This document shows, piece after piece, positions 8,141 through 50,232 of a stretch of DNA of 64,000 nucleotides. Position numbers and translations under genes: made by a program. The first letter of the stretch is position 1. Each line of letters starts with the position of its first letter. Where the stretch lies: assembly GCA_965112155.1 (NCBI GenBank), contig OZ218104.1. One strand, given 5' to 3'. The notes below the pieces were generated by a model. That model had not been told where the DNA came from and searched no databases. It saw only the letters and a program-made list of their open reading frames with translations. This DNA comes from Podarcis liolepis (taxonomy: Eukaryota).

Positions 8141-8740
8141 TAATAAAATGTAGGTAGTCAACTTTTACCATTGAAAGAATGAAGAAATGAGAATGTGGTA
8201 ATAGGAATGAGTGCTCATAAAGGGATTTAATTAACTGAGGACCACTGTGGTACAGTAGGGTGGATGAACCAGGGATACGTGGGTTCAGATCTCCACATGA
8301 CTTTCTCAGAACCATCTTGGATGAGTCATTGTCTTCATTCAATGTAATGCTAAGATTATAGGAAGCTGCGTTATACAGAAGCAGACTATTGATTTACCTT
8401 CCTCAGTAGGTTCCCCTGGGTTTCAGGTAGCAGTTCCTCCTAGCCCTTCTGCATGCAAAACAGCTGAGCTGTGGCCTTTCCCCATGGCTTGCTACCCTAA
8501 GTGCAGCTGTTTATTTTTCTCATATGAGTGAATGGTACTCATATGTGGGGGAAATATAGGGGGAGCACTTGGTGACACCATTGGGGTTGTGATGGCCACC
8601 ATGATTTAACTCATACAATTTAAGTTCCTATGGGTTTATCTTATGCAAATAATTGCCACCACGCTGGATCTTATTTGACTCGTCATTATTGGTTTATTAG
8701 TTGGAGATGAGTAATGTGGAAATATTCACATGCATTTTAG

Positions 8741-8913
8741 GCTAACATCCACTGAAGCAATTCCCAAGAGCAGGTTCCTGGTACTGGGTTCTAAATTCCG
8801 ATACAGTGGTCGGACACAGGCACAGACAAGACAAGCTAGTGCCCTGATTGATAGACCTGCACCACAGTTTGAACGGACAGCAAGTAAACGGGCCTCTAGA
8901 AGTCTTGATGGCG
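8741..8913 (+). CDS. EPB41: EPB41 exon 12 (FERM-adjacent): [57 protein letters not shown]
   Basis: ttttag| and G|gtgagt, 173 nt; [12 protein letters not shown] motif. Confidence 0.97.
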
Positions 8914-9675
8914 GTGAGTATCTAAACTTCCCTGCTTTGCTATAGGGACCCCCTTATACCAGTCTTAATCTGTAGATTTTCTGTTTACAGATTCTGCTCA
9001 GAGCTTCGGTTTAATTTGGTTTTCAGATGTTCATATTCGTTTAAAGGTTTTTTCTTTATCAAGTGGTGTTTTCTTTTAAAAATTATTAAATTAATTTGTT
9101 TTACGAGGTTGTCCATGGTATATGCCCTAGGGGAAGAAAGAATGTAGAACTCAGTAACTTATACACAGTTCTTACCACATCCTGAACACATGGGTGCCAC
9201 TGCAACTCCATGGCTTCTCTGTTGGGAAATGTGAGGAGCCGGTTTCTAAGAGCATTGATGCTGGTGTGAGAAGTCACAACATAGGCTCTTCACATTTGGT
9301 CCAAGGTTACATGGGACAAGGCATGATTGGGATTGTAATGAATCCCAAGCTGATGAGATAATGTAAGAACTGGACTCTAAAATTCTGAACGTTCATAAAG
9401 GTAGCTTTTATATTATCCCCCCAAATTAAATGGTGTGCCTTTGAATGCATCCTGTTAATTCTAACTAACAGCTGTACAATTTGAGATAAAATTGTAAACT
9501 ATTTTGGAATGAGGCAAAATTCCACTTTCCATCATTGCCCTGCTGAAACTCAAATTGAAGAACCAACAACAAAGAATAAGAGCAAACAATAATTATATCC
9601 AGACTAAAATCTACAATGTTCTCTTTATATATACTATATCCTGAATATTCTGTAACATGTACACAATTTCTTCAG

Positions 9676-9792
9676 CTAAACGTGGCTCTCAAAAAATAGA
9701 GTTCAAACCCGTAGAGGAGGAGAAGCAGGAGGATGTGGTGTTGGTTGGGGTTCCGGAATCAGAACCTGTGGAACAAATTCGAGAGAAGCCAG
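9676..9792 (+). CDS. EPB41: Putative EPB41 cassette exon 12a: AKRGSQKIEFKPVEEEKQEDVVLVGVPESEPVEQIREKP
   Basis: tttcttcag| and CAG|gtatcg, 117 nt, phase 1-1 matching exons 12/13, open frame, purine-rich. Confidence 0.72.
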
Positions 9793-11604
9793 GTATCGCT
9801 GTGGGTAGCTCTGATTCTCTCTCTCTTCTTGCCTCTGCGGTGCCTTTTCTATCCTTTCATGAGCTGAGACATCTTATCTGAATCTGAAATGCTTCGTATG
9901 TTCTGGCACCCGTTTTTCCCCCTTCAGAGAAATAAAACAATGTCTTAACTGGTCAGAACACAGTTGGCCACTTCTGTACTTCACTCCGTAAAAGCCCTTG
10001 CATCAGCAGTAGCATAGATTTCAGAGGGCTGCCAAAAATGCTTTGCACTTTGAATTAATTGTCAGGTGACTGAAATACAAATATTTGCTCATGCTGTATC
10101 AAATTGCAACATAATGGAATGGAAAGAAAAGAACTTGAGATGGAGCTGTCTCCCCCCACTCCTGCCCCTCACCACCCCACATCTGAATTCTCAGATTGAG
10201 AGCTTTGTAATTGCTGTGCTGGAAAATAATAGATTTGCAACCCTAAAATTGTATTCAAACTCTCCCAGGTGTATAGGACACACTTGCTTCTTTCAGTTGT
10301 TTCAGAATTAATGTTAATGAGGCCTTAAGTTTCTTACGAAAACCTAAGTGTGTCTCTAAAGACATATAATTTTTCATAATACTTTCCCCAAAAACTGATA
10401 CTTAGAAACTGCATAGCTTCTCATCTAATATACATTTGCATTTGCTATGTTAGCGGAGCACATTTCTGTCGTAATGAAAAGACTCTTACAATGGGTCTTG
10501 AACTAGTTTTCAGTTTGGCTTCTTCACGCTAACCTTTCATGTTATTCTGTTATATTCTTATCAACAGGATCTAATCAGAGCATTCTGCTTATTGGTATTG
10601 GGAGCTCCTTTTTAGCTTTATACAAATGAAGTAGGGTTTATCCCTGTACATTTCTTTCTGCATGAATTCATTTTAGAAATCTAGTGGGGGGTTTTTTATT
10701 ATTTGAGCACTGGAGAATCATTTCTTGCGCACAATATTAACATTGCATACTATAAGGCTGAACAAAAGTACTTGAGAGATGTGGCCTCTTACAGAACAAC
10801 ATCTTAGCTGATACAAAAGCATGCTCTTTGTACTTATTTTAGTGTGCAGGTGGTGGAGTTGTGATGGGGATCTAACTTCTTAAGTGACTTTAGACAAACT
10901 GTATTCTCTTCAGATGTGTGCCTCTGTTGTAAATAAGAACAATATAACCATAATGATTGTACCACTAATACACTAAATTCTTCATATAGGTAAAATTTTT
11001 TTTTAAAGCTCTGCCTGTTGGCTGACTATTGGACTTTCGCATTTTAGAGGGAGGGTTGTATCCAGTGCTAGTAATACTCAGAGTAAACCCGTTGAAATTA
11101 ATGGACATGACTAATATATCAAGTGTTAGGATTGTCAAAAGGCAGCAGCAGCCTTGGTAGTTCTTTCACCCTCATAAGTTTGAAGGTTGGTGATCCAGGT
11201 GAGGACATTTTCTGTGGCAACCTCTAATCTATGGAATTCTCTCCATACAGAGGTGCAGCTGGCACTTTCGCAGTATAGCTTTTGTCATACGCTAAAGCTC
11301 CAGCTCTTTACCCTGGCCTTTGACACCTGAGAGAGAGAGAGATTTTAGGTCCCACACCGTTAGTCTGAAATTATTTTTTAAAACTGTTTTAATAACGTAT
11401 TTTTATATTATTGTAGCATTTTCTGGAACCTTAGGGTGAAGGGTAGGTAAGAAATCCAATGAACAGTAAACACCGACAATGACAACAACTTATGTAGGTC
11501 CATTAATTTAAATGGGTCTGCTTTGAGTAAAGCTTTGATACAACCTAGAGGGTTTTAAAAATTGAAATCTTACTGGCGGTTTATTAACTGTGCAATTCTT
11601 CTAG

Positions 11605-11721
11605 CGAAAGATACGCTTGAGAATTTTGAAAAAATAGTGACTGAGGAAGAGCTGAAGTTTGAAGTATTTAAAGTTCCTGTTCCAGAAACAAAATTAGTGG
11701 AATCATTAGAAAAACAGTCAG
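11605..11721 (+). CDS. EPB41: Putative EPB41 cassette exon 12b: AKDTLENFEKIVTEEELKFEVFKVPVPETKLVESLEKQS
   Basis: ttcttctag| and CAG|gtacaa, 117 nt, phase 1-1; 13/39 ungapped identities to 12a. Confidence 0.65.
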
Positions 11722-12106
11722 GTACAAGTGTGACAGCTTCTCATATGAGTGTGGTTTAACATTCCTTTCTGCTTTCTCCCCTGTTGAGAATATTAAGATC
11801 CTAAAGGCTAATATCAATAATATAAGCCCCCACATGATAGTCGCTGAACTAACCATACCATACACAAAAGTATGCAACCTTTCTAAATAAATCAATAGCA
11901 ATTTTATGCTGTATCTGTCTTTGTGTAGTGCATGATTTATTGAAACATATTACTGGAATCTTATTTTTAAAAGCTTAAGATAAGGAATAATAAATACTCT
12001 GTAAGGTTAGCATTCGGGCAAGGCAAGATTTGCCAGCAAATGTAGTCCTAGTAGTCTTTCCCTTTTATTCTTAACAGTTTTAAAACGAATGCATAACTTT
12101 TTTTAG

Positions 12107-12232
12107 CCATACATGTTCTTGAAAAGTTTGACATAAGCCCAATAAAAGAAGAGGAGAAGGAAGAAAAAACAATTGTGGTGCAGAATCTAGAACAAAAACC
12201 GCTATTACTTGAAACAGTTCAGGAGGAGTCAG
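12107..12232 (+). CDS. EPB41: Putative EPB41 cassette exon 12c: AIHVLEKFDISPIKEEEKEEKTIVVQNLEQKPLLLETVQEES
   Basis: tttttttag| and CAG|gtataa, 126 nt, phase 1-1; downstream intron resembles that of 12b. Confidence 0.65.
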
Positions 12233-13778
12233 GTATAACAGTGATAGCTTTTCACACTTGTGTGGCTAATATTTTCTCCTTTGTAGTTAATACACTCTCT
12301 CTTGCTTCTACCACCTAAGAATTCACTAGTGCTCACTGCAGTGACAAAAACTTACTAGTGGCATGGCACTCTCACAGAATGGTATGAGATTTCAAAGAAG
12401 CAACAGCTCTGTTGAGAACTGTTAAAGAAGAATTTAAATTACCATCATTCTTTAAGCACCAAATAGCAATGTGAAAGTTAGGGAACATCCATAGATAGCA
12501 GTTTTGAAAAGGGCTGTATGTAGATTGAATGCCATTCTAACCTTTGCAGAATGCATGCTCTGGGGTGTTTGTGTTTTGCCTTTCCCTTGACTTTACGTAC
12601 TCTAGAGAAATTGCATGATCAGTAAGCATGACCTTCCAGTAGTAGCAGAGTAGGCCCACAGTGTGGAGGGAAAACACAAAAGGTTCCTGCCTTTTGGGAT
12701 CCGTAAAGAACTTAACAGGCAGAGGAGGAAGTGCATGATCCTACAGCCTGCTCACAATTTCTTAACCATACTTAAAGTGCTTCTAGTTAATGATAAAGAG
12801 TGCAAGACATAGATTGGTGTCCAAGATCATACTTTAACTTGAGTAGCTTAGTTTTTTATTATTAAGTATATTTAATTGATTAAACATGTACTTGGTATTT
12901 GAATTTAACCTTTGAAAATGTCTTTTGTGAAGGCAAAGGCTCTTCTGGGGGGACATATACAATTGTGGGCTGATAAGAATTTCTCGGTGCTATTAATTAA
13001 TACTAATACATTTTATGTGTTTTGTGTTGGGGGCAGGAGGTGGTACTGCACTTGCACATTCTCCTGCTTCCTTAGCAGTTTTTCTTAGCGTCCTCTGACA
13101 TTGTTATTGTGTGGTGCCCACCTGCACTGCAAACATGTCAGCAGCCCAATATCATGTAGAAAGAGTCCACATTGTGTCACCTCCTGATGCAAGCATTGAC
13201 CCAGTTTCCAAGAAAGGTTTTGTAGAAAGGTGGTGTAGATTCTCCCATACAACCTAGGGCTTTTGATGCTATCCTCACAGCACAGGAAAGAACTACAGTA
13301 TTGCAAGTCACATCACAAGGGCCATTAGTGTTGAGGCCTGTCCACCATTTTAAACAAGCATGTTTATAGTCAACAAGTTCATATTTTCTTGGGTCTTGGG
13401 TTTTGAGTGTATTGGTATTAGGTAAACAGCAGTAATCTGGCTTTTGTTGTAATATTGGTGATTATTCACACCACAATTAGCTGTTTTTATAAAAACAGCA
13501 TTTGAAATGTCCAAGTGCTTTTACAGTGTGGATTTGACTAGCATTTTAAGTGTGTGGCTCTTGAGTGATATCTAATTTTGGTTTCTTAACTTTTATTCAA
13601 CACATGGTAAAAACAAACTTAGCCTTCCACATTAAACCAGTGCCAGCTGCTTTGCACTTCTTTCTTTTGCATTGCTGTGACTCCTTTCCTCCTGGTTTTT
13701 TCATTCTTTGGGGTCGGATTTTGGGGGTTTGCCTCACTCTCACTCACTCTCACTAAATCAAAATATATTTCTACTCAG

Positions 13779-13984
13779 CAGTAGCAGTGGTTACACCAGA
13801 CCGAAGCCCACGGCCTACATCTGCACCAGCTATTGCTCAGAGCCATGTAACCGAACCAACTCCTCCAGTTGTATCTGAAAGCAAGGAGCCAGTGGTCACT
13901 AAAGCTGAGAAGGAGAGAAAAGAGGTACAACATGAACAAACTCTGCCAGAGAAAACCAAAACAGAGCCTGCTGAAGGATCCCAG
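13779..13984 (+). CDS. EPB41: EPB41 exon 13 (U2): AVAVVTPDRSPRPTSAPAIAQSHVTEPTPPVVSESKEPVVTKAEKERKEVQHEQTLPEKTKTEPAEGSQ
   Basis: ctactcag| (tandem NAG acceptors) and CAG|gtatgt, 206 nt, phase 1-0; DRSPRPTSAPAI motif of 4.1R. Confidence 0.93.
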
Positions 13985-16659
13985 GTATGTTAGACTACCA
14001 GTGTTAAATTATATATTGTTTGCTTGTGTGTGAGAAAAATAAAAAGTTGAAGGGTCCTTTATGTAGGAGTTCATCTCAGTCAGGGCCTATCCAATACACC
14101 TTGTTGCCAAAAGCAGCCAATAAAGGCGTCTCCTTGGCTCACCAGGGAAAGTATACCCTTATTTCCTCTTTGTTGTGTATTCTGGACATAGGTTAGAGTT
14201 GGAATGGCAGATTACACTACTTGCCCAGCCCTCCTGTCACTGCCTCCTGACACAGGAGAACGCTCAAGCTGAACATTTGTCACAGTTGTCCTCAGTGGCC
14301 AAACAATTCCCACTGTGACTAATATGCCATATGAACCTTGTAACCAATACTTTCCAGTAGTCCTTTCTCTTGTCCTGCCTGACAATTCTGCCTAGGTAGG
14401 GGGATGACTGTACTTTCCAACTCTGCATACCTGCAGCTGGAGAGAGTTGCTCACCCTCTGGCTCTTCTGAGAACACAGAGTCTTTGGGTTCCTTCCAAAA
14501 TGCCTGTGCTCTGTCAGAGGGGTCTACTCTGGTATTCACTGTGGCATTTGCAATCAGTTTGGCTTTATTGGTGTCCCAAGTGACTTTGTGAGTTGCTTGT
14601 TTTGTCATACTTGTTTTGATTTCAGTGCTGCATTTGAAAACAGTGAAACATATTTTACTCCCATTGAAATCTGTAGGAGTTAAGGAGAAAATTTTGTTCT
14701 TAAGTCCCATATTGTGGCTGTACTCAGATGTCCTTTGGGCTTGGTGACAACACTGTTGTGATGAGAGGTACAATCTATTTTCTCCATGAAAAGTTCTGAT
14801 TTTAACACTCTTGTTGCAAAGATATGCAACACTTTATACGAGTGTATAGGGACTTATTTGCTATTACAAATTATGGCCTGCTAGTAAGCAAAACCAAAAT
14901 GTATGGCTTGATCATATGACTTGTAATGACATGGCTTGATTGCCTTTGAAATTCCACTAAATCTGGTCAGTGACCAGGCCTATTCTTGAGCTGAGCTTGT
15001 GCATTTACTGCTGCTGAGGTTTGAACTCAGAATCTTTCAGCAGCTACAGAATATCAGTTTATTTGCTTTCCCTGGATTAACAAGTTCTTTTTATGCTGAC
15101 AATTAGACACAGGTTGATTGTCATTCTTTACATGATATAAGAAAATAAACCCTCCATGATAGAAGCTTCTTAGGAGAGGACTACTTTAGCATTTTTCTGC
15201 TCATCTCTTACATATATTTGTGTAATGTACAGTAGAGCATACACTTCGTTTGTTGGTGTGACTTCAGACGGCCATATGGTATAGTTCTTGTGTTCCTATA
15301 GTTCGGAGAAAGTGGAAAAGACAAATGAAATGAGCAAGGCTTTGTAGCATTAATTCTTAAGCCTTTTGGAAGAGGTTGTGTATTTTAAGCTTAAAGAATA
15401 ATCAGGGGAGGGGAATAGGCAAGAGAGGTTTTTGGAAAAGGTGTGAAATTATTTTCTCAGCTTTGGAACTTGTGGGTCATTGAATGATTATGATTGCCAA
15501 CAAGTTCAGGACACTACAATAGGACGCCCTACGATTTGCACTGCATAATTAGCAGATAATTCATTGTCACCAGATACAGTGATATCAGGGAATGGGTCTT
15601 TCCATTGATCATACTCTACTTGTGAGTTCTGTGGAGCATTTAGCTTCCCACTGATGAGTCAATTCCATCAAGGCATTTTTATGACCCAACAGGAAATCTG
15701 AGAGCCAGTTCTCAGGGTCATTTTCATCTCCATTACAGCGCTTTCCAAGTGATTTGTATGGAGATGGTCACATAAGAACCAGAATCTCCATTGATACACA
15801 TTTTCAGCTATTGCAATACCAGCTGAGAAGGCATTTTCAGTGGAGCCAGAATTGACAGCATGAACCAGTTCTTTATTTGTGTGTATATCCAGAAATAGGA
15901 GTAATTCAGATAAAGTCAGTAAGTTGACAGATAGGAACGAATGGAGTTGATAGCACCACCACACAATGTACATTTATTTCAATCATTGTATCCCAAAGGA
16001 TCATGTAGCTAGATTTTCACATAGTAGGCGTTTAGTCTTCTTTCCTCCACCCGAAAGAGCATATCCGTGTACATATATCATGCTTCACTGCAAACCAGAC
16101 TTAAAATTTGGGAGAGTTTCACAGTTGGTTTATGGTGCAGCACGTGAGTCCACTTTCAGATTGTGCACACAAAAACTTTAATACTAAAAATATCCAGTGG
16201 GGCTTGCATGGGAGCCTCTCCAAAAGCTCCCTCGAAATGTCTTATTAGTATATAACTTTTAAAGTTAGATATTTCCTTAAATATGTGAGAAGAGTTACTG
16301 CCTTACGTATATTACTCTTAAACTGGGAATCAAAAGAACTAGACAACTACTTAGTTATTTGTGATTATATTGATGTTTATTATATGATCACGTGCATGAT
16401 GTTTTGAGTTTGATTGCTTTGTGGTATTTATTCGCAGCTGTTACGAAGCTGCATACAAATAAAATAAATAGTTCCACATGCTCAAGGAACTTGAACCAGG
16501 CCATGTGGGAAACTGTTCAGGGTGGGGGGAGAGTTTAGGCAGTATGTTGTGATATTCTTTCCAGTCTACAAAGGGAGAATAAGTGAAAAAACACACTGGA
16601 TGTGTGCAAGCATTTAGGCATGTTTAAAGTAAATTTTGGGATCTTTGGTATTGATCCTC

Positions 16660-18207: not shown

Positions 18208-18270
18208 AAAAGATCAAAGAGACTAGATGGTGAAAACATTTATATAAGACATAGCAATTTAATGTTGGAG
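18208..18270 (+). CDS. EPB41: EPB41 alternative exon 16 (spectrin-actin-binding): KRSKRLDGENIYIRHSNLMLE
   Basis: long pyrimidine tract, cacag| and GAG|gtttgt, 63 nt. Confidence 0.97.
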
Positions 18271-23491: not shown

Positions 23492-23671
23492 GATCTAGAT
23501 AAACCTCAAGAGGGGATAAAGAAGCATCATGCTAGCATTAGCGAACTGAAGAAGAACTTTATGGAATCTGTCCCTGAGCCACGGCCAAGTGAATGGGACA
23601 AGCGCCTCTCAACTCATTCTCCCTTCAGGACCCTTAACATCAATGGACAGATCCCCACAGGAGTAGAAGGA
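23492..23671 (+). CDS. EPB41: EPB41 exon 17 (SAB): DLDKPQEGIKKHHASISELKKNFMESVPEPRPSEWDKRLSTHSPFRTLNINGQIPTGVEG
   Basis: tgatag| and GGA|gtgagt, 180 nt, phase 0-0. Confidence 0.97.
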
Positions 23672-25302: not shown

Positions 25303-26614
25303 GTAAAGCTGCTGTTTTGATATGTGCTTCTGAAGCAGACTTTTGCTGTTGTAATGGCACTGAGCAAAACCAAAACCCTCAACAGCAGCTGCTGAGTGGC
25401 ATTTTCTTTTGGCTGCCTTTTTAAATAGTTTCATCTCTCACAGCCTCCTGTTCTAACACTTTCAAAAAGGATTTGCACTGCTGCAAGCTTTTGCAGCTTT
25501 CAGTTGCTTTTTTTCAGCGCATGGCTGATTGAAAAAGTTGCATGAATATGTTGCCATATATTTAGAGAGAGAGAGCAATTATGAAAGTTTAACTGTACCC
25601 TGTTCTTTTTATGTTGTCTTCCTCTCTTTTCCTGTTTTTCTTTAAACTCTCTTGCATTCTGTATCATTATCATTTTTTTTGCTGCCCAGCCCCCCAGCTA
25701 CTTCCTCCCTGATACCCATCACTTAGGGGTGTGCAAAGACAATGTCCCCAAATATCAGGCTGATCAAAGAAGATTGACTCAGCTGAGAGAGCTGAGAACT
25801 AATTTTTTCCTTTCCTAGATAGCTGCTTTCATTTGCCATACATAGCAAAAATAAACGTATAGAATATGTTTTGAACAGACCAAAACAAAGAAATTCCCTG
25901 TTTTCTAGCTTACACTTAGTTTTCATATACAACTGCAATATAGCTTTGTATTGTGTTATATTCTTTACACACTGGTGACACAGATGAAATCAATGTGGAG
26001 TAACTCCATTCTTTGTAATTGTAACATTAAAAAAATAATATTCCAGCTTATTGGTTTTTCAAGTGACTGAACACTTTGCACTTTAACCACAATATAATTT
26101 TGAAGTGGAACTTTTGATACTATCTTCCATGGCAATATCTTTGACAGAATTCAATTATATTTGCACTACAATTTAAGTATCAAATAATTAATGCCATTCT
26201 GAAGATCAGTGTAGCATAGGAAGTTATGACCAACGTTTTGTACAACAGTGTTTCTCTTTGTAATTCAACAAGGATATTGTTTCGCAAATATTTCTACAGT
26301 TTAATGCTGAAAGATGTATTTTAGCACATGGGTGGAGTTAACATTAAATGGGTTTCTCCACTGAAAACTATTATCAACTTAGGAATAATTTACCCACTTA
26401 GAAAGCACTTCGTATTTGTCCCTATAGTCTGGTCCCAATGTACAGGATTAGTGGATGAATGTATTGAATGCAGCAGCAGAGCACACTTTAGTTAACTTCA
26501 TGTCAATTTCTCTGACTTCTGTCCTTGCACATCCCCGAGTATCATTTTTGAGCACTTTCCACCTGTCATTTTGTTCATCTCTCTGTCTTTCTTGATCTTC
26601 TACCATGAAAGCAG

Positions 26615-26866
26615 ACACTGGAACGTCCTCTGTTAGTGCAGGATGAAGATAATAATAAAAAGCAAGAGACAGCTACTGAGGGAACTTTGCCCGAACAAAC
26701 AAATGAAGAAATCCAGGCAAAGATTTCTATTCAAATTCCTGAAGAGCAGAAATCGCTCAAAACATGCCGCCTGTACTCTAGAGCTTTTCCTTCTCCGCGC
26801 ATTCCCTTTATGATGTCTTTTTTGGTGGTCCTTGCACTGACTGTGTGGTGGCTGGTTTTTCTGTGA
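26615..26866 (+). CDS. EPB41: Putative EPB41 alternative (terminal) exon with hydrophobic C-terminal tail
   Basis: Pyrimidine tract 26565-26600, aag/cag| acceptor in phase 0, open frame TLERPLLVQDEDNNKKQETATEG...IPFMMSFLVVLALTVWWLVFL*. Confidence 0.5.
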   Translation, partial: TLERPLLVQDEDNNKKQETATEGTLPEQTNEEIQAKISIQIPEEQKSLKTCRLYSRAFPSPRIPFMMSFLVVLALTVWWLVFL

Positions 26867-38883: not shown

Positions 38884-39360
38884 AGTGCGAGTGACTCTCC
38901 CTTCAAAGAGGATCTGGATGCAATGGCAGAGGGGGGAAATATTACCTCTCACTTTGAATGGGAGGTCTCAAAGCACTCAGTGGCCCTTAGTGAGAGCCCA
39001 GTGTCAAGCCCACAGGAGTCTGCACATACTTGTGAATCTGACACTTCTTCCGCAAGCAGCAAGGAGCAGGAGAAGCAGGGTGCTGCTGCTGCTGCCGCTC
39101 TCAGTGAGAGCAAGGAAGACCTAAGGTGTGGAGAGGGATTTTACTCAGATGTGGAGAAAGAGGCTGAGGACTCAAAACAGGATGAGATGGAAGTCTATAA
39201 AATCCCTTCTTCACCTCCATTGCACCTCCACGAACAAGAGGAGGAAGCCTGTGATGTTGAAGGGGGAAAAGGGGCAAGTGAGCCACTTAGCGAGCTAAAT
39301 GGAGAATGTCACAGCTCAAGTATTGATAATGAGTTTCCTGCCCTCATTCGCTGTTTCCAG
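38884..39360 (+). CDS. EPB41: EPB41 large alternative exon (17B-like), acidic and Ser-rich: SASDSPFKEDLDAMAEGG...SSSIDNEFPALIRCFQ
   Basis: cattttag| and CAG|gtagta, 477 nt, phase 0-0, open frame (ORF 38923..39489), located just before exon 18. Confidence 0.85.
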
Positions 39361-40521
39361 GTAGTAAATGTGAACTTGAAACACCTCTCTTTGCAGTCTT
39401 CTCTGCTACATTTTCGGAGCCATTCTACAAACACTGCAGCAAGCATATGTCATAAATCCATAAAGAAGGATTATGTTTTGATGGCCTGAAATATTCCCCA
39501 AACTAATCAACCACTTAATCTCCAGTCTATAGGAATGATTCCCCTCCTCTACAAAGTAGATGTATATTTTATTAAAACAATTTTTTAAAAAGTATTGTCT
39601 CCTGACTCAAGCAGAATATATTTAAAAGAAAAGGAAACCAATTCTAAAAGGCATCAGATTTTATGAGATAGTGCTAAATGTCTTCTGTGTGTTGTAAATA
39701 CATTGCAGAAAATATTGAGCTAAAAGCAGCCAGAGCCGCAAGTCTTTCCATTTACAAGAACAAAACATAGCTCTTTGAGTCTATAGTCATCTGATTTGGA
39801 AATCTCTGAGGAAACACCTGCATTTACCCATCAAAGTAAAAAATAAATAAAAATTGCCTGCTCCAGTGTTCTTAACAATCCCATCTGCTAAAATACCTCA
39901 ACATTTGATCTGGGAATAATCAAGGTGATATCTGTCAGACTTTGAAAAGGTGAAGGGAACATAACAGAGTGGGAAAAGCCTGGTGGTGCTCTTACTAATA
40001 TTACATTCTCTTTTGATTAATTATCAGGTGGTGGCACAGCTGATTTTTCTTTTCCTGTTATTCTTGAAATTTGTATATCCATAAATAATGATCTGATGCT
40101 GATTTAATAGAAGCTACTGGACTCTACACATCTCACACTGGCTGGAAATCATACATTTGTATAATCTCTTAATATACTAGCATATTAATCAGACTTGAGC
40201 TCCTCCTAACCATAAAGATTCTTATCCGCATGCTAAATTTGGCTTACCCTTTTAACTATGAAACAGTTTCCATATTTTAGTTTGCAGATGGTCACATTTG
40301 GCCAGGAAGCTAGGGGGAAAATGTTATTTGTATTTTATCTCCAAACATTGACAGATGACTTTCCAAAATGTGCCTTTAGTGCAAACAACATAGCAATTGA
40401 AATTTCTATATGGAGTCCATTGTGCTTTTATCAGATCAGTATTGGAATGGTTGTCAGTAATATTGTTAGAGTTTAATGGTACTAAATGTGATTTCTCTCT
40501 CTCTAAAATCCTGTTTTGTAG

Positions 40522-48439: not shown

Positions 48440-48569
48440 TGCAAGATCTAAGTGCTGTTCTGACCATTCATACTTGAAGATATGTGTCTAAATGGAAATT
48501 CCTCCATCTCTTTTTTGCATTCTTAGGATGTCAGCCGAGAAAAGTAATTTCTGAAACAATTTTATTTTG
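48440..48569 (+). repeat. Intronic direct repeat copy 1 (~130 bp) containing a candidate micro-exon at 48527
   Basis: Closely similar to 50091-50232. Confidence 0.9.
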
Positions 48570-48837
48570 GTCTCTTAGGGAGCCCCTCACTGGACAACCT
48601 CTCCAATAATAGGAAGATAAGCAACTGTTTGTGTAACTTAGCTTAAAAGAGAATTCCATAAACACTGTTGGATTAAAGGATGGCTTTCTCCACAGTTTAT
48701 CCTCCAAAGTACTGGATATTTATAGGTCCATGTCTTCCTCCTGAGGGGAATTTATATTTAATGTTTAGGTGTTGCATGGTTTCACTTAATAATGGAGAAG
48801 TATTCTTGTGTTAACACAGATAAAGGCATTTCAGCAT

Positions 48838-48838
48838 G

Positions 48839-48886
<48 letters not shown>

Positions 48887-48950
48887 AATAATACCCCACC
48901 TATCTGGGCAGCTTCCAACACATTTAAAAACATAATAAAACATCAACCAT
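48838..48950 (-). repeat. (TTA)n microsatellite with adjacent LINE-tail remnant
   Basis: (TTA)n followed by ATACCCCACCTATCTGGGCAGCTTCCAAC, related to 7830-7920. Confidence 0.75.
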
Positions 48951-50090
48951 TAATAGCAACAATCTGATCCAATATTAAAAAGACACAACAACTTTTAAAT
49001 TAAACAACTTATATCAAAAAAGCAATATTCAATCATCCATTGAAATCTAATAGTAAACAGTAAAATTAAGCATCAGCATATAATAAAAGTTTATGCTTAT
49101 CAATTACAATAAAGAATTACTAATCTATAATCAATAAAATAGCAAATCACAGTGCATAAAATACCACAAAACATACAAAAAGACATTAAAAGGATCAAAT
49201 TGATACACAATCTAAGGTTTTCTGGGCTCCATTTCATTTGGACTAACAGAGTGAGAAGGCGAATAAATTTGCCAGTAGGTTAGGATGATGAGATTATGAA
49301 GGAATTGTGCTGTTAAGCATTTCTGTTCATCTTCCACAGCATTCCTTCAATGACTAGGTTTGTTGCTTATACACCTTTACCTCTCTTTGTTTTTGTACCA
49401 GTTCTCCTGGTGTATAAGAAGTGTGTGTTTGAATCTAAGAGTTTTCTGCTAGCATGAATTTGGTTGAAAGTGGAACTGTGACTTTCAGTCAAGTAGATAA
49501 AGTTTATTTTTAAAAAGGACTAAAGACGCATCTCAATTGTCCAGTGGATTTTTTAAAGTATCATTTTTAATACAAGTACTTGTATTTACAAGCACTGTCT
49601 TAAGGCGAATTCCCCTCTTCTTTCTCAATCAGGAATTGATGCTTCCTGTAACATTATCTAAAAGAAAGATTGCAGAATCTAAAAACAAAATATGTTTTTA
49701 AAACATGTTTTTTCATAAAAACTGTTGCTTTTATTCATATGTATGTGTAGTTAAACAACTAAAACACAATGAATCCACTATGATTTCTCTAATTGGGTGG
49801 TAGTCCGAGTAGAAAGACAAATGTTAGCAGGACTGTTTCAGATATTACTTTCCCCCCATGTAGATGTGACCATTCATCTTATCAGACCATAGGACAAAAA
49901 CTTTTTCTCTACTTGCTCTTTCTTTTTTTGTACTTGCTCTTTGTCTTTCCTCTCCCTCTATTTCTCTTAATGTGGAACTAGCTTTTTATGCAAAAACTGA
50001 ATAGGGAAAGGAGGAAACAAAGATGTATATCTTTATAATGAGTAGGTCAGTTATTAAGTGGACACACAAACTTTGTGTCTGATAAAGGTC

Positions 50091-50232
50091 TGCAAGATCT
50101 AAGTGCGGTTCTAACTATTCATACATTGAAGATACGTGTCTATATGGAAATTCATCCATTTCTTTTTCTTTCTTTTTTTGCATTGTTAGGATGTCAGCAG
50201 AGAAAAGTAATTTCTGAAACAATTTTATTTTG
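50091..50232 (+). repeat. Intronic direct repeat copy 2 containing a candidate micro-exon at 50190
   Basis: Closely similar to 48440-48569, with a longer pyrimidine tract. Confidence 0.9.

What the first reader, a model, noticed from the sequence alone, without database searches (positions are those of the whole stretch)
9676..12232. Array of three tandem-duplicated, frame-preserving cassette exons between EPB41 exons 12 and 13
Seen: three purine-rich segments of 117, 117 and 126 nt. Each has an AG acceptor, a CAG|GTA donor, phase 1-1 matching the 12/13 junction, and no stops. Peptides 12a and 12b align without gaps (A1 K2 E9 EEE14-16 V21 V24 VPE26-28 VE32-33; 13/39). 12c shares the LE.F, EEE and terminal S pattern. 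The introns after 12b and 12c are also alike (GTACAAGTGTGACAGCTTCTCATATGAGTGTGGTTTAACATT vs GTATAACAGTGATAGCTTTTCACACTTGTGTGGCTAATATT). Known: canonical human 4.1R joins SLDG directly to exon 13. Inference: exon duplication created a modular acidic E/V/K/P-rich spacer of up to 120 aa between the membrane-binding FERM and spectrin-actin-binding domains, tunable by combinatorial or mutually exclusive splicing.
Basis: partly seen in the sequence, partly recalled or inferred. Interest (0 to 1): 0.8.

Follow-up and report, generated by a model that had tools for sequence, protein, structure and literature searches.

The report
Conserved triplicated cassette exons in 4.1R
Three small, related exons between exons 12 and 13 of the red-cell skeleton gene EPB41 (protein 4.1R) are real, expressed and alternatively spliced in this lizard, but the same three exons are already in public gene models of many birds and a gecko.

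Summary
Exons 12a (9676-9792), 12b (11605-11721) and 12c (12107-12232) have AG/GT borders, lengths divisible by three and one open frame, the phase-1 frame of the exon 12/13 junction. Stranded RNA-seq shows every predicted junction. Exon 12 joins 12a in both samples. 12b and 12c are each included or skipped, and they also occur together. Splicing is therefore combinatorial, not mutually exclusive.

The tandem-duplication origin is supported. Profile-profile comparison of the three ortholog sets gives P of 1e-5 to 3e-8 and beats every column shuffle. 12b and 12c also share about 50 nt of downstream intron.

The array is old and already annotated. The same three cassettes, in the same order, occur in a gecko protein fragment. 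They also occur in all 120 listed bird 'protein 4.1' entries, out of 1340 significant hits. The array therefore predates the bird-squamate split.

AlphaFold2 predicts the cassettes to be disordered, and no Pfam family covers them. I infer a splice-tunable acidic linker placed directly after the FERM-adjacent domain.

I found no paper that describes these exons. Whether turtles, crocodilians, amphibians or mammals have them could not be tested here. Novelty is low and interest modest. The scan's earlier notes held nothing on this feature.

The parts
8741..8913 (+). EPB41 exon 12 (end of the FERM-adjacent domain, ends ...SRSLDG, phase 1 out)
   Evidence: Translation; tblastn with bird protein 4.1, 90% identity; the Pfam FA domain ends just before the cassettes in the gecko ortholog; junction reads to 9676
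9676..9792 (+). Cassette 12a, 117 nt, 39 aa; near-constitutive in the two RNA samples; the most conserved of the three (67% identical to birds)
   Evidence: junction reads exon 12->12a 16 and 15, 12a->12b 14 and 3; orthologs in gecko and birds
9654..9675 (+). Acceptor-side intron flank of 12a, conserved between squamates and birds
   Evidence: Database ORF calls that read through the exon borders keep the same residues upstream (N-M-C/Y-T/P-I/V-S-S) in squamate-like and bird-like sequences
9793..9806 (+). Donor-side intron flank of 12a, conserved between squamates and birds
   Evidence: Read-through ORFs all continue G-I-A/T/S-V after the exon
11605..11721 (+). Cassette 12b, 117 nt, 39 aa; alternative (included and skipped)
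   Evidence: Junctions 12a->12b, 12b->12c and 12b->exon 13, plus the skip 12a->12c; orthologs 46% (gecko) and 51% (birds) identical
11722..11775 (+). Intron element directly after 12b, paralogous to the one after 12c
   Evidence: Local alignment z=7.7, p<=0.0005
12107..12232 (+). Cassette 12c, 126 nt, 42 aa; alternative (included and skipped)
   Evidence: Junctions 12b->12c, 12a->12c and 12c->exon 13, plus the skip 12b->exon 13; orthologs 81% (gecko) and 41% (birds) identical
12233..12282 (+). Intron element directly after 12c, paralogous to the one after 12b
12552..12737 (+). Cluster of three TGCATG (RBFOX-type) motifs 320-500 nt downstream of 12c; candidate splicing enhancer, not tested
   Evidence: Poisson P about 3e-4 for this stretch and about 0.1 after scanning the whole window; two of the copies lie in a local 16-nt repeat (D18)
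13779..13984 (+). EPB41 exon 13 (phase 1 in, phase 0 out)
   Evidence: junction reads from 12b and 12c

Best explanation
The window carries the 3' two-thirds of the EPB41 (protein 4.1R) gene of a squamate. Between exons 12 and 13 lie three paralogous cassette exons, 12a, 12b and 12c. They arose by tandem exon duplication before squamates and birds diverged and have been kept in frame since then. All three are spliced into mRNA. 12a is included in nearly all transcripts sampled. 12b and 12c are each included or skipped independently, so the insert is 39, 78, 81 or 120 aa long. The insert is acidic, rich in E, V, K and P, and predicted to be disordered. It sits directly after the FERM-adjacent domain, at the start of the variable V2/U2 linker that leads to the spectrin-actin-binding domain. 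Inferred, not shown: the cassettes act as a length- and charge-tunable flexible spacer. Also inferred: weak donor sites and conserved intron elements control the 12b/12c choice, including the roughly 50-nt element that 12b and 12c still share.
For: Exon anatomy and the single open frame. Stranded RNA-seq junction reads for all six junctions in two samples, plus spliced contigs from two other organism labels. Gene identity: tblastn of bird protein 4.1 finds exons from 1163 to 51875, and the ortholog has FERM_C and FA Pfam domains. One-to-one orthologs of 12a, 12b and 12c occur in the same order in Sphaerodactylus townsendi and in all 120 listed bird protein 4.1 entries, out of 1340 hits. Paralogy: hhalign gives P=7.7e-6 (12a-12b), 1.7e-5 (12a-12c) and 2.7e-8 (12b-12c), and 0 of 100 column shuffles reach the observed scores. 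The 13 columns upstream of the poly-E run alone give z=4.1-5.9. Exactly three copies exist in the window. Constraint: identity to birds is 67% for 12a, 51% for 12b and 41% for 12c, against 52% for constitutive exon 13. Disorder: AlphaFold2 pLDDT is 40-50 with no secondary structure across the cassettes. Regulation: the 12b:12c coverage ratio flips between the two RNA samples (about 16:6 versus 5:14 reads, approximate Fisher p=0.005). The shared intron element gives z=7.7.
Against: The function is inferred only; no binding, mechanical or tissue data exist. The tissues of the two RNA samples are unknown. Junction counts are small (1-16 reads), and junctions with fewer than 3 reads are not listed, so rare exon 12->13 skipping cannot be excluded. 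E-rich composition inflates alignment scores; the shuffles and the N-terminal-only test reduce this problem but do not remove it. Within this genome alone, 12b versus 12c is not significantly similar at protein or DNA level.
Confidence: 0.8

Rival explanations
1. The three exons arose independently by separate exonisation of intron sequence. They look alike only because each was selected for the same acidic, low-complexity composition and the same splice phase.
For: Within this genome the DNA similarity of the exons is not significant, and 12b-12c protein similarity is at chance. A poly-E core aligns easily.
Against: Profile-profile scores beat all column shuffles. The non-acidic N-terminal 13 columns match in fixed register (z 4.1-5.9). 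The exons have the same phase and nearly the same length. 12b and 12c share flanking intron sequence. No repeat-element pile-up overlaps the exons; the multi-copy read depth lies at 10992-11175 and 11360-11543, both in the intron.
Confidence: 0.08
2. The cassettes form a mutually exclusive exon cluster: one and only one of them is used per transcript.
For: Tandem-duplicated exons often behave this way. The 12b:12c ratio flips between samples.
Against: Reads join 12a to 12b (14 and 3) and 12b to 12c (6 and 3), so the cassettes co-occur. Bird models carry all three together. No docking/selector-type inverted match to the shared intron element was found.
Confidence: 0.03
3. The cassettes are not a passive spacer. 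They carry specific regulatory or binding motifs, so that inclusion switches a particular interaction or phosphorylation. Candidates are the conserved basic-basic-x-S/T site at the start of 12a, next to the known kinase-target region of the FA domain, and the invariant Q-I/F-R-E-K-P end of 12a.
For: 12a is more conserved between lizard and birds (67%) than constitutive exon 13 (52%). Positions such as K-R at 2-3, E-F at 9-10 and the C-terminal motif are nearly invariant. Review PMC10887211 states that phosphorylation in the FA domain regulates FERM and SAB interactions.
Against: No partner or kinase is known. AlphaFold2 shows no ordered element. 12b and 12c tolerate in-frame length changes in the E-run and at the C-terminal end.
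Confidence: 0.3
4. The exons are tolerated splicing noise with no selected function.
For: The encoded sequence is disordered, low-complexity and matches no domain family.
Against: Frame, order, number and splice borders are kept between squamates and birds. 12a and its intron flanks are conserved. Inclusion levels are high.
Confidence: 0.04

Closest known systems
Predicted 'protein 4.1' isoforms of birds (RefSeq/GenBank models, e.g. Ara ararauna, Haliaeetus, Falco, Tyto, Pygoscelis, Pyrgilauda) and the Sphaerodactylus townsendi entry UniRef100_A0ACB8FSV5
   Same: They carry the same three cassettes at the same site (after ...SRSLDG, before exon 13), in the same order and with one-to-one orthology.
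   Different: The bird cassettes are 39, 43 and about 31-37 aa with longer E-runs; the lizard and gecko cassettes are 39, 38-39 and 42 aa. These are automatic models, and I found no paper that describes or names the exons.
Known alternative exons 14, 15 and 16 of mammalian EPB41 (V2/U2 and SAB region)
   Same: They are small frame-preserving cassettes in the same linker of the same gene, and their combinatorial use yields many 4.1R isoforms. Exon 16 skipping and inclusion are also seen here (loose ends).
   Different: Exons 14-16 lie after exon 13, are not paralogs of each other and are conserved in mammals. According to the exon map I recall, mammals have no exon between 12 and 13. PCR across exons 12-16 in alpaca erythroid cells gave only the products with and without exon 14 (PMC9926112).
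Camelid 4.1R(90): a proline/glutamate-rich 'PE' insert in exon 13 plus the exon 14 cassette (PMC9926112)
   Same: It is an unordered acidic P/E-rich extension of the V2 linker that enlarges 4.1R. It was studied in relation to ellipsoidal red cells.
   Different: The camelid PE lies inside exon 13 and is not a separate exon. In that study PE alone did not change ternary-complex formation; the e14 cassette did. No such assay exists for cassettes 12a-c.
Tandem-duplicated, differentially spliced disordered-module exons such as the titin PEVK exons (from general knowledge, not tested here)
   Same: They are arrays of short, phase-compatible, duplicated exons that encode P/E/V/K-rich disordered modules, and the number included is set by splicing.
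   Different: Only three copies exist here. There is no sequence relationship to titin, and no mechanical role has been shown.

Membership tests
EPB41 / protein 4.1R gene | FERM, FERM-adjacent, spectrin-actin-binding and C-terminal domain exons in order, with the best match to 4.1R rather than to paralogs | tested here: met
   tblastn of bird 'protein 4.1' finds collinear exons from 1163 to 51875 at 79-100% identity in the domain exons. Pfam FERM_C and FA are found in the gecko ortholog. Exon 13 carries the R-S-P-R-P-T-S-A-P-A-I motif shared with bird 4.1. Paralogs were not compared explicitly.
Cassette (skipped/included) alternative exons | Canonical splice sites, plus reads for both the inclusion and the skipping junctions | tested here: met
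   Met for 12b (inclusion 9792|11605; skip 9792|12107) and for 12c (inclusion 11721|12107; skip 11721|13779). For 12a only inclusion was seen, so 12a is not shown to be alternative.
Tandem exon duplication-derived exon array | Adjacent exons of equal phase and similar length with sequence similarity beyond composition | tested here: met
   All three are phase 1-1 and 117/117/126 nt long. hhalign gives P of 7.7e-6 to 2.7e-8, and 0 of 100 column shuffles reach the observed scores. The N-terminal columns alone give z 4.1-5.9. 12b and 12c share a flanking intron element.
Mutually exclusive exon cluster | One and only one exon of the array per transcript; no reads joining two members | tested here: not met
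   12a-12b and 12b-12c junction reads occur in both RNA samples. Bird and gecko models contain all three.
Mutually exclusive exon cluster | Competing RNA structures (a docking site complementary to selector sequences next to each exon) | tested here: not met
   None of the 25 longest of 55 inverted-repeat pairs in 8900-13800 involves the shared element after 12b or 12c; the other 30 pairs were not displayed.
Intrinsically disordered linker module | No predicted stable fold, low-complexity composition and tolerance of in-frame length change | tested here: met
   AlphaFold2 pLDDT is 40-50 with no helix or strand over residues 92-210 of the gecko fragment. There are no significant Pfam hits. E-run and C-terminal indels occur among orthologs. 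This rests on prediction only.
RBFOX-regulated exon | Conserved UGCAUG elements downstream, and dependence of inclusion on RBFOX proteins | not testable with these tools
   Three TGCATG motifs lie 320-500 nt downstream of 12c. Their conservation in other species and any RBFOX dependence could not be examined.

The most novel reading that the evidence does not exclude
The array is a disordered linker module that is at least sauropsid-wide and that mammals lack or lost. The 12b/12c choice is set tissue-specifically by a paralogous intron element that has stayed alike in both copies since the duplication, which predates the bird-squamate split. The resulting change in spacing between the FERM/FA and spectrin-actin-binding domains contributes to the larger 4.1 variants and the distinct membrane-skeleton mechanics of nucleated, ellipsoidal sauropsid red cells.
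Probability: 0.2. Interest if true: 0.5.

Novelty: already known. Interest (0 to 1): 0.25.

Why it matters
Biologically it is an ordinary, though tidy, case of tandem exon duplication giving a splice-tunable disordered linker. The orthologous exons already sit in public bird and gecko gene models. What remains is a descriptive gap. Nobody appears to have described these cassettes in print, dated them, or asked whether they explain the long-known multiple large protein 4.1 variants of avian red cells (Granger and Lazarides 1984, 1985, cited in PMC2114562). The paralogous intron element after 12b and 12c is a small, testable lead for splicing regulation.

Tried and rejected
1. I looked for a fourth or relic copy. 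An HMM built from all cassette orthologs, run against all six-frame ORFs of the window, found only the three exons.
2. I looked for a docking/selector RNA structure. No listed inverted repeat involves the shared 12b/12c intron element.
3. A 16-nt, 94% complementary pair joins 12a (9722-9737) to intron position 13055-13070. About 0.14 such pairs are expected by chance (my own estimate), so I did not pursue it.
4. Apparent direct repeats link the 12a region to 12714-12763, but they are not collinear, so I treat them as chance.
5. Pfam on the three peptides gave nothing significant. Two sub-threshold Ig-like hits on 12c (E 0.013 and 0.069) are well below the curated cut-offs.
6. A search with the gecko fragment found only itself and one short unnamed ORF, because of the tool's length filter. 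That result says nothing about other taxa.
8. The listing of cluster members gave no organism names for the short read-through ORFs.
9. Four literature searches for a description of exons between EPB41 exons 12 and 13 found none.
11. The third homologous-protein search was left unused, because no query within the length filter could bring non-avian full-length proteins to the top.

Full report
**What is in the sequence**

The region was read directly and checked by script.
- Exon 12 of a protein 4.1 gene ends at 8913 with ...SRSLDG and leaves one base of a split codon.
- Three segments follow at 9676-9792 (117 nt), 11605-11721 (117 nt) and 12107-12232 (126 nt).
- Each segment is preceded by AG and followed by GTA. 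Each is a multiple of three in length.
- Each is open only in the frame that continues the split codon. The other two forward frames carry 1-5 stops each.
- Exon 13 begins at 13779 and ends at 13984.
- The acceptors of 12b and 12c are TAG. None of the three donors (GTATCG, GTACAA, GTATAA) has the consensus G at +5. That is typical of regulated exons.

**Gene identity**

tblastn of two bird 'protein 4.1' proteins retrieved later finds collinear exons from 1163 (FERM) to 51875 (the last coding exon). Identity is 79-100% in the domain exons. The gecko ortholog has Pfam FERM_C and FA domains, and the FA domain ends just before the cassettes. The gene is EPB41 (4.1R), on the + strand.

**Expression**

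One search for sequencing runs offered two stranded bulk RNA-seq runs of a closely related organism label (X23, X24). It also offered contig sets from two further organism labels (X13, X14). I laid them on 8600-14100. All gene reads have the first mate on the minus strand, which fits a + strand transcript in a standard stranded library.

Junction reads (X23/X24), all with GT..AG borders:

| Junction | X23 | X24 | Spliced contigs |
|---|---|---|---|
| exon 12->12a (8913\|9676) | 16 | 15 | none |
| 12a->12b (9792\|11605) | 14 | 3 | X13 and X14 |
| 12a->12c (9792\|12107) | 1 | 0 | X13 |
| 12b->12c (11721\|12107) | 6 | 3 | X14 |
| 12b->exon 13 (11721\|13779) | 5 | 0 | none |
| 12c->exon 13 (12232\|13779) | 2 | 4 | X13 and X14 |

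- No exon 12->exon 13 or 12a->exon 13 junction reached the listing threshold of three reads.
- So 12a is included in nearly all sampled transcripts.
- 12b and 12c are true cassettes that can be used together or singly. The cluster is not mutually exclusive.
- Coverage of 12b against 12c flips between the two samples (bin depth 13.0 v 4.8 in X23, and 4.2 v 11.1 in X24). With approximate read counts this gives Fisher p of about 0.005, which suggests sample-specific regulation.
- The tissues are unknown and the counts are small.
- The tool drops reads that resemble human DNA without notice, so depth on the highly conserved exon 12 is not reliable.
- Loose ends at 13984/13985 show exon 13 joined either to exon 17 (D-L-D-K-P-Q-E...) or to exon 16 (K-R-S-K-R-L-D-G-E...). 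That is the known variability of this gene.

**Relatives**

The three exon peptides were aligned by reference (A1). The profile was scored against 1.84 billion cluster representatives and gave nine hits.
- Two hits have three matched stretches each.
- P0001 is a 304-aa fragment later identified as Sphaerodactylus townsendi, UniRef100_A0ACB8FSV5. It runs exon 11-12, 12a, 12b, 12c, exon 13.
- P0003 is a 931-aa full-length 'protein 4.1' isoform of Ara ararauna.
- The other seven hits are short unnamed ORF calls that read 12a through both splice borders.
- They show that about 20 nt upstream and about 15 nt downstream of 12a are conserved between squamate-like and bird-like sequences.
- A word search with the macaw cassette region (residues 549-664) gave 1340 significant proteins. 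The best 120 are all bird 'protein 4.1' isoforms: parrots, eagles, falcons, owls, penguins, storks, hoatzin, cuckoo and passerines. All 120 match 99-100% of the cassette region, and the between-exon segment was extracted intact from 118 of them.
- Splitting those segments gives clear one-to-one orthology in conserved order.
- Identity of the lizard peptides to birds is 67% (12a), 51% (12b) and 41% (12c), against 52% for constitutive exon 13. Identity to the gecko is 85%, 46% and 81%.
- The array therefore predates the squamate-bird split and has been kept in frame since.

**Duplication**

- Within this one genome the evidence is modest: 12a-12b z=3.8, 12a-12c z=4.2, and 12b-12c is not significant.
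- With ortholog profiles it becomes strong. hhalign gives P=7.7e-6, 1.7e-5 and 2.7e-8, and none of 100 column-shuffled controls per pair reaches the observed score.
- A poly-E core could drive such scores. I therefore scored only the 13 columns upstream of it, in fixed register. The z values are 4.1, 5.1 and 5.9, with p<=2e-4.
- The shared module reads roughly A-K-x-A/x-L-x-x-F/V-E-x-x-P-I/V, then an E-run, then K-x-V-V-x-V-P, then a P/K/E-rich tail.
- An HMM of all copies finds exactly three copies in the window.
- The first 50 nt or so of the introns after 12b and 12c are alike (z=7.7).
- The exons themselves have diverged to near-chance DNA similarity since a duplication that predates the bird-squamate split. 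Intron similarity that survives this long is best explained by selection on a splicing element kept in both copies. This is inference.

**Nature of the product**

- AlphaFold2 was run on the gecko fragment with 23 bird sequences as the alignment. It gives pLDDT of 40-50 and no secondary structure across all three cassettes and exon 13.
- Pfam has nothing significant on the cassettes.
- Orthologs differ by in-frame changes in the E-run and at the C-terminal end.
- The product is thus a disordered acidic insert of 39-120 aa placed directly after the FA domain.
- A spacer role is inferred.
- A more specific role is a live alternative: a basic-basic-x-S/T site at the start of 12a and the invariant end of 12a.

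**Comparison with what is known**

- I found no paper that describes exons between EPB41 exons 12 and 13.
- The closest functional parallel is the camelid 4.1R(90), with a disordered P/E-rich insert in exon 13 plus exon 14 (PMC9926112).
- In that paper, PCR across exons 12-16 in alpaca erythroid cells gave only the products with and without exon 14. This fits with mammals lacking these cassettes.
- Avian red-cell protein 4.1 has long been known to exist as multiple variants (Granger and Lazarides 1984, 1985, cited in PMC2114562). Whether cassettes 12a-c contribute to them is untested.

**Limits**

There is no dN/dS and no test of intron-element conservation.
- The length filter of the word search kept full-length squamate, turtle, crocodilian, amphibian and mammalian proteins out of reach. 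The taxonomic range beyond squamates and birds is therefore unknown.
- The earlier scan notes returned concern other parts of this window and did not bear on this finding.

**Verdict**

The duplication origin and combinatorial use are supported, and mutual exclusivity is rejected. The feature is ancient and already present in public gene models. Novelty is low and interest modest.

Noticed in passing
window 11075-11106 and 11498-11529: This is an inverted pair of SINE-like fragments (32 nt, 84% complementary, 391 nt apart) in the intron just upstream of 12b. Both attract large multi-copy RNA read pile-ups with loose ends from other genomic copies, and apparent 'skips' of about 380-388 nt that are not splicing.
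   Followed up: partly
window 12552, 12612, 12732: Three TGCATG motifs lie within 186 nt, 320-500 nt downstream of 12c, and two of them sit in a local 16-nt repeat (GAGRAAKTGCATGATC). They could be an RBFOX-type enhancer like the one known for EPB41 exon 16.
   Followed up: partly
window 38884-39486: A 201-aa open frame matches residues 888-1067 of a long bird protein 4.1 isoform at 35% identity. It is probably the large alternative exon of the 17b type.
   Followed up: partly
window 9776: An A>T difference occurs in all 12 reads of RNA sample X24 and in none of 26 reads of X23. It is the third base of codon 34 of 12a and changes Q to H, so it is a non-synonymous polymorphism inside the cassette. 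In contrast, 12201 G>A in 12c is synonymous and present in both samples.
   Followed up: partly
window 13984/13985 (loose ends): RNA reads and contigs continue from exon 13 either into exon 17 (at 23492) or into exon 16 (about 18208-18270). Exon 16 is therefore alternatively used here, as in mammals.
   Followed up: no
window 9654-9675 and 9793-9806: The intron flanks of 12a are conserved between squamate-like and bird-like sequences. This shows up in database ORF calls that read through the splice sites. It is unusual for an exon that looks constitutive in the sampled RNA.
   Followed up: partly
window 26612-26866 and 48440-50232: Earlier first-reader notes on this window propose a tail-anchor exon and a duplicated intron-19 module with a stop-carrying micro-exon. 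I did not examine either of them.
   Followed up: no
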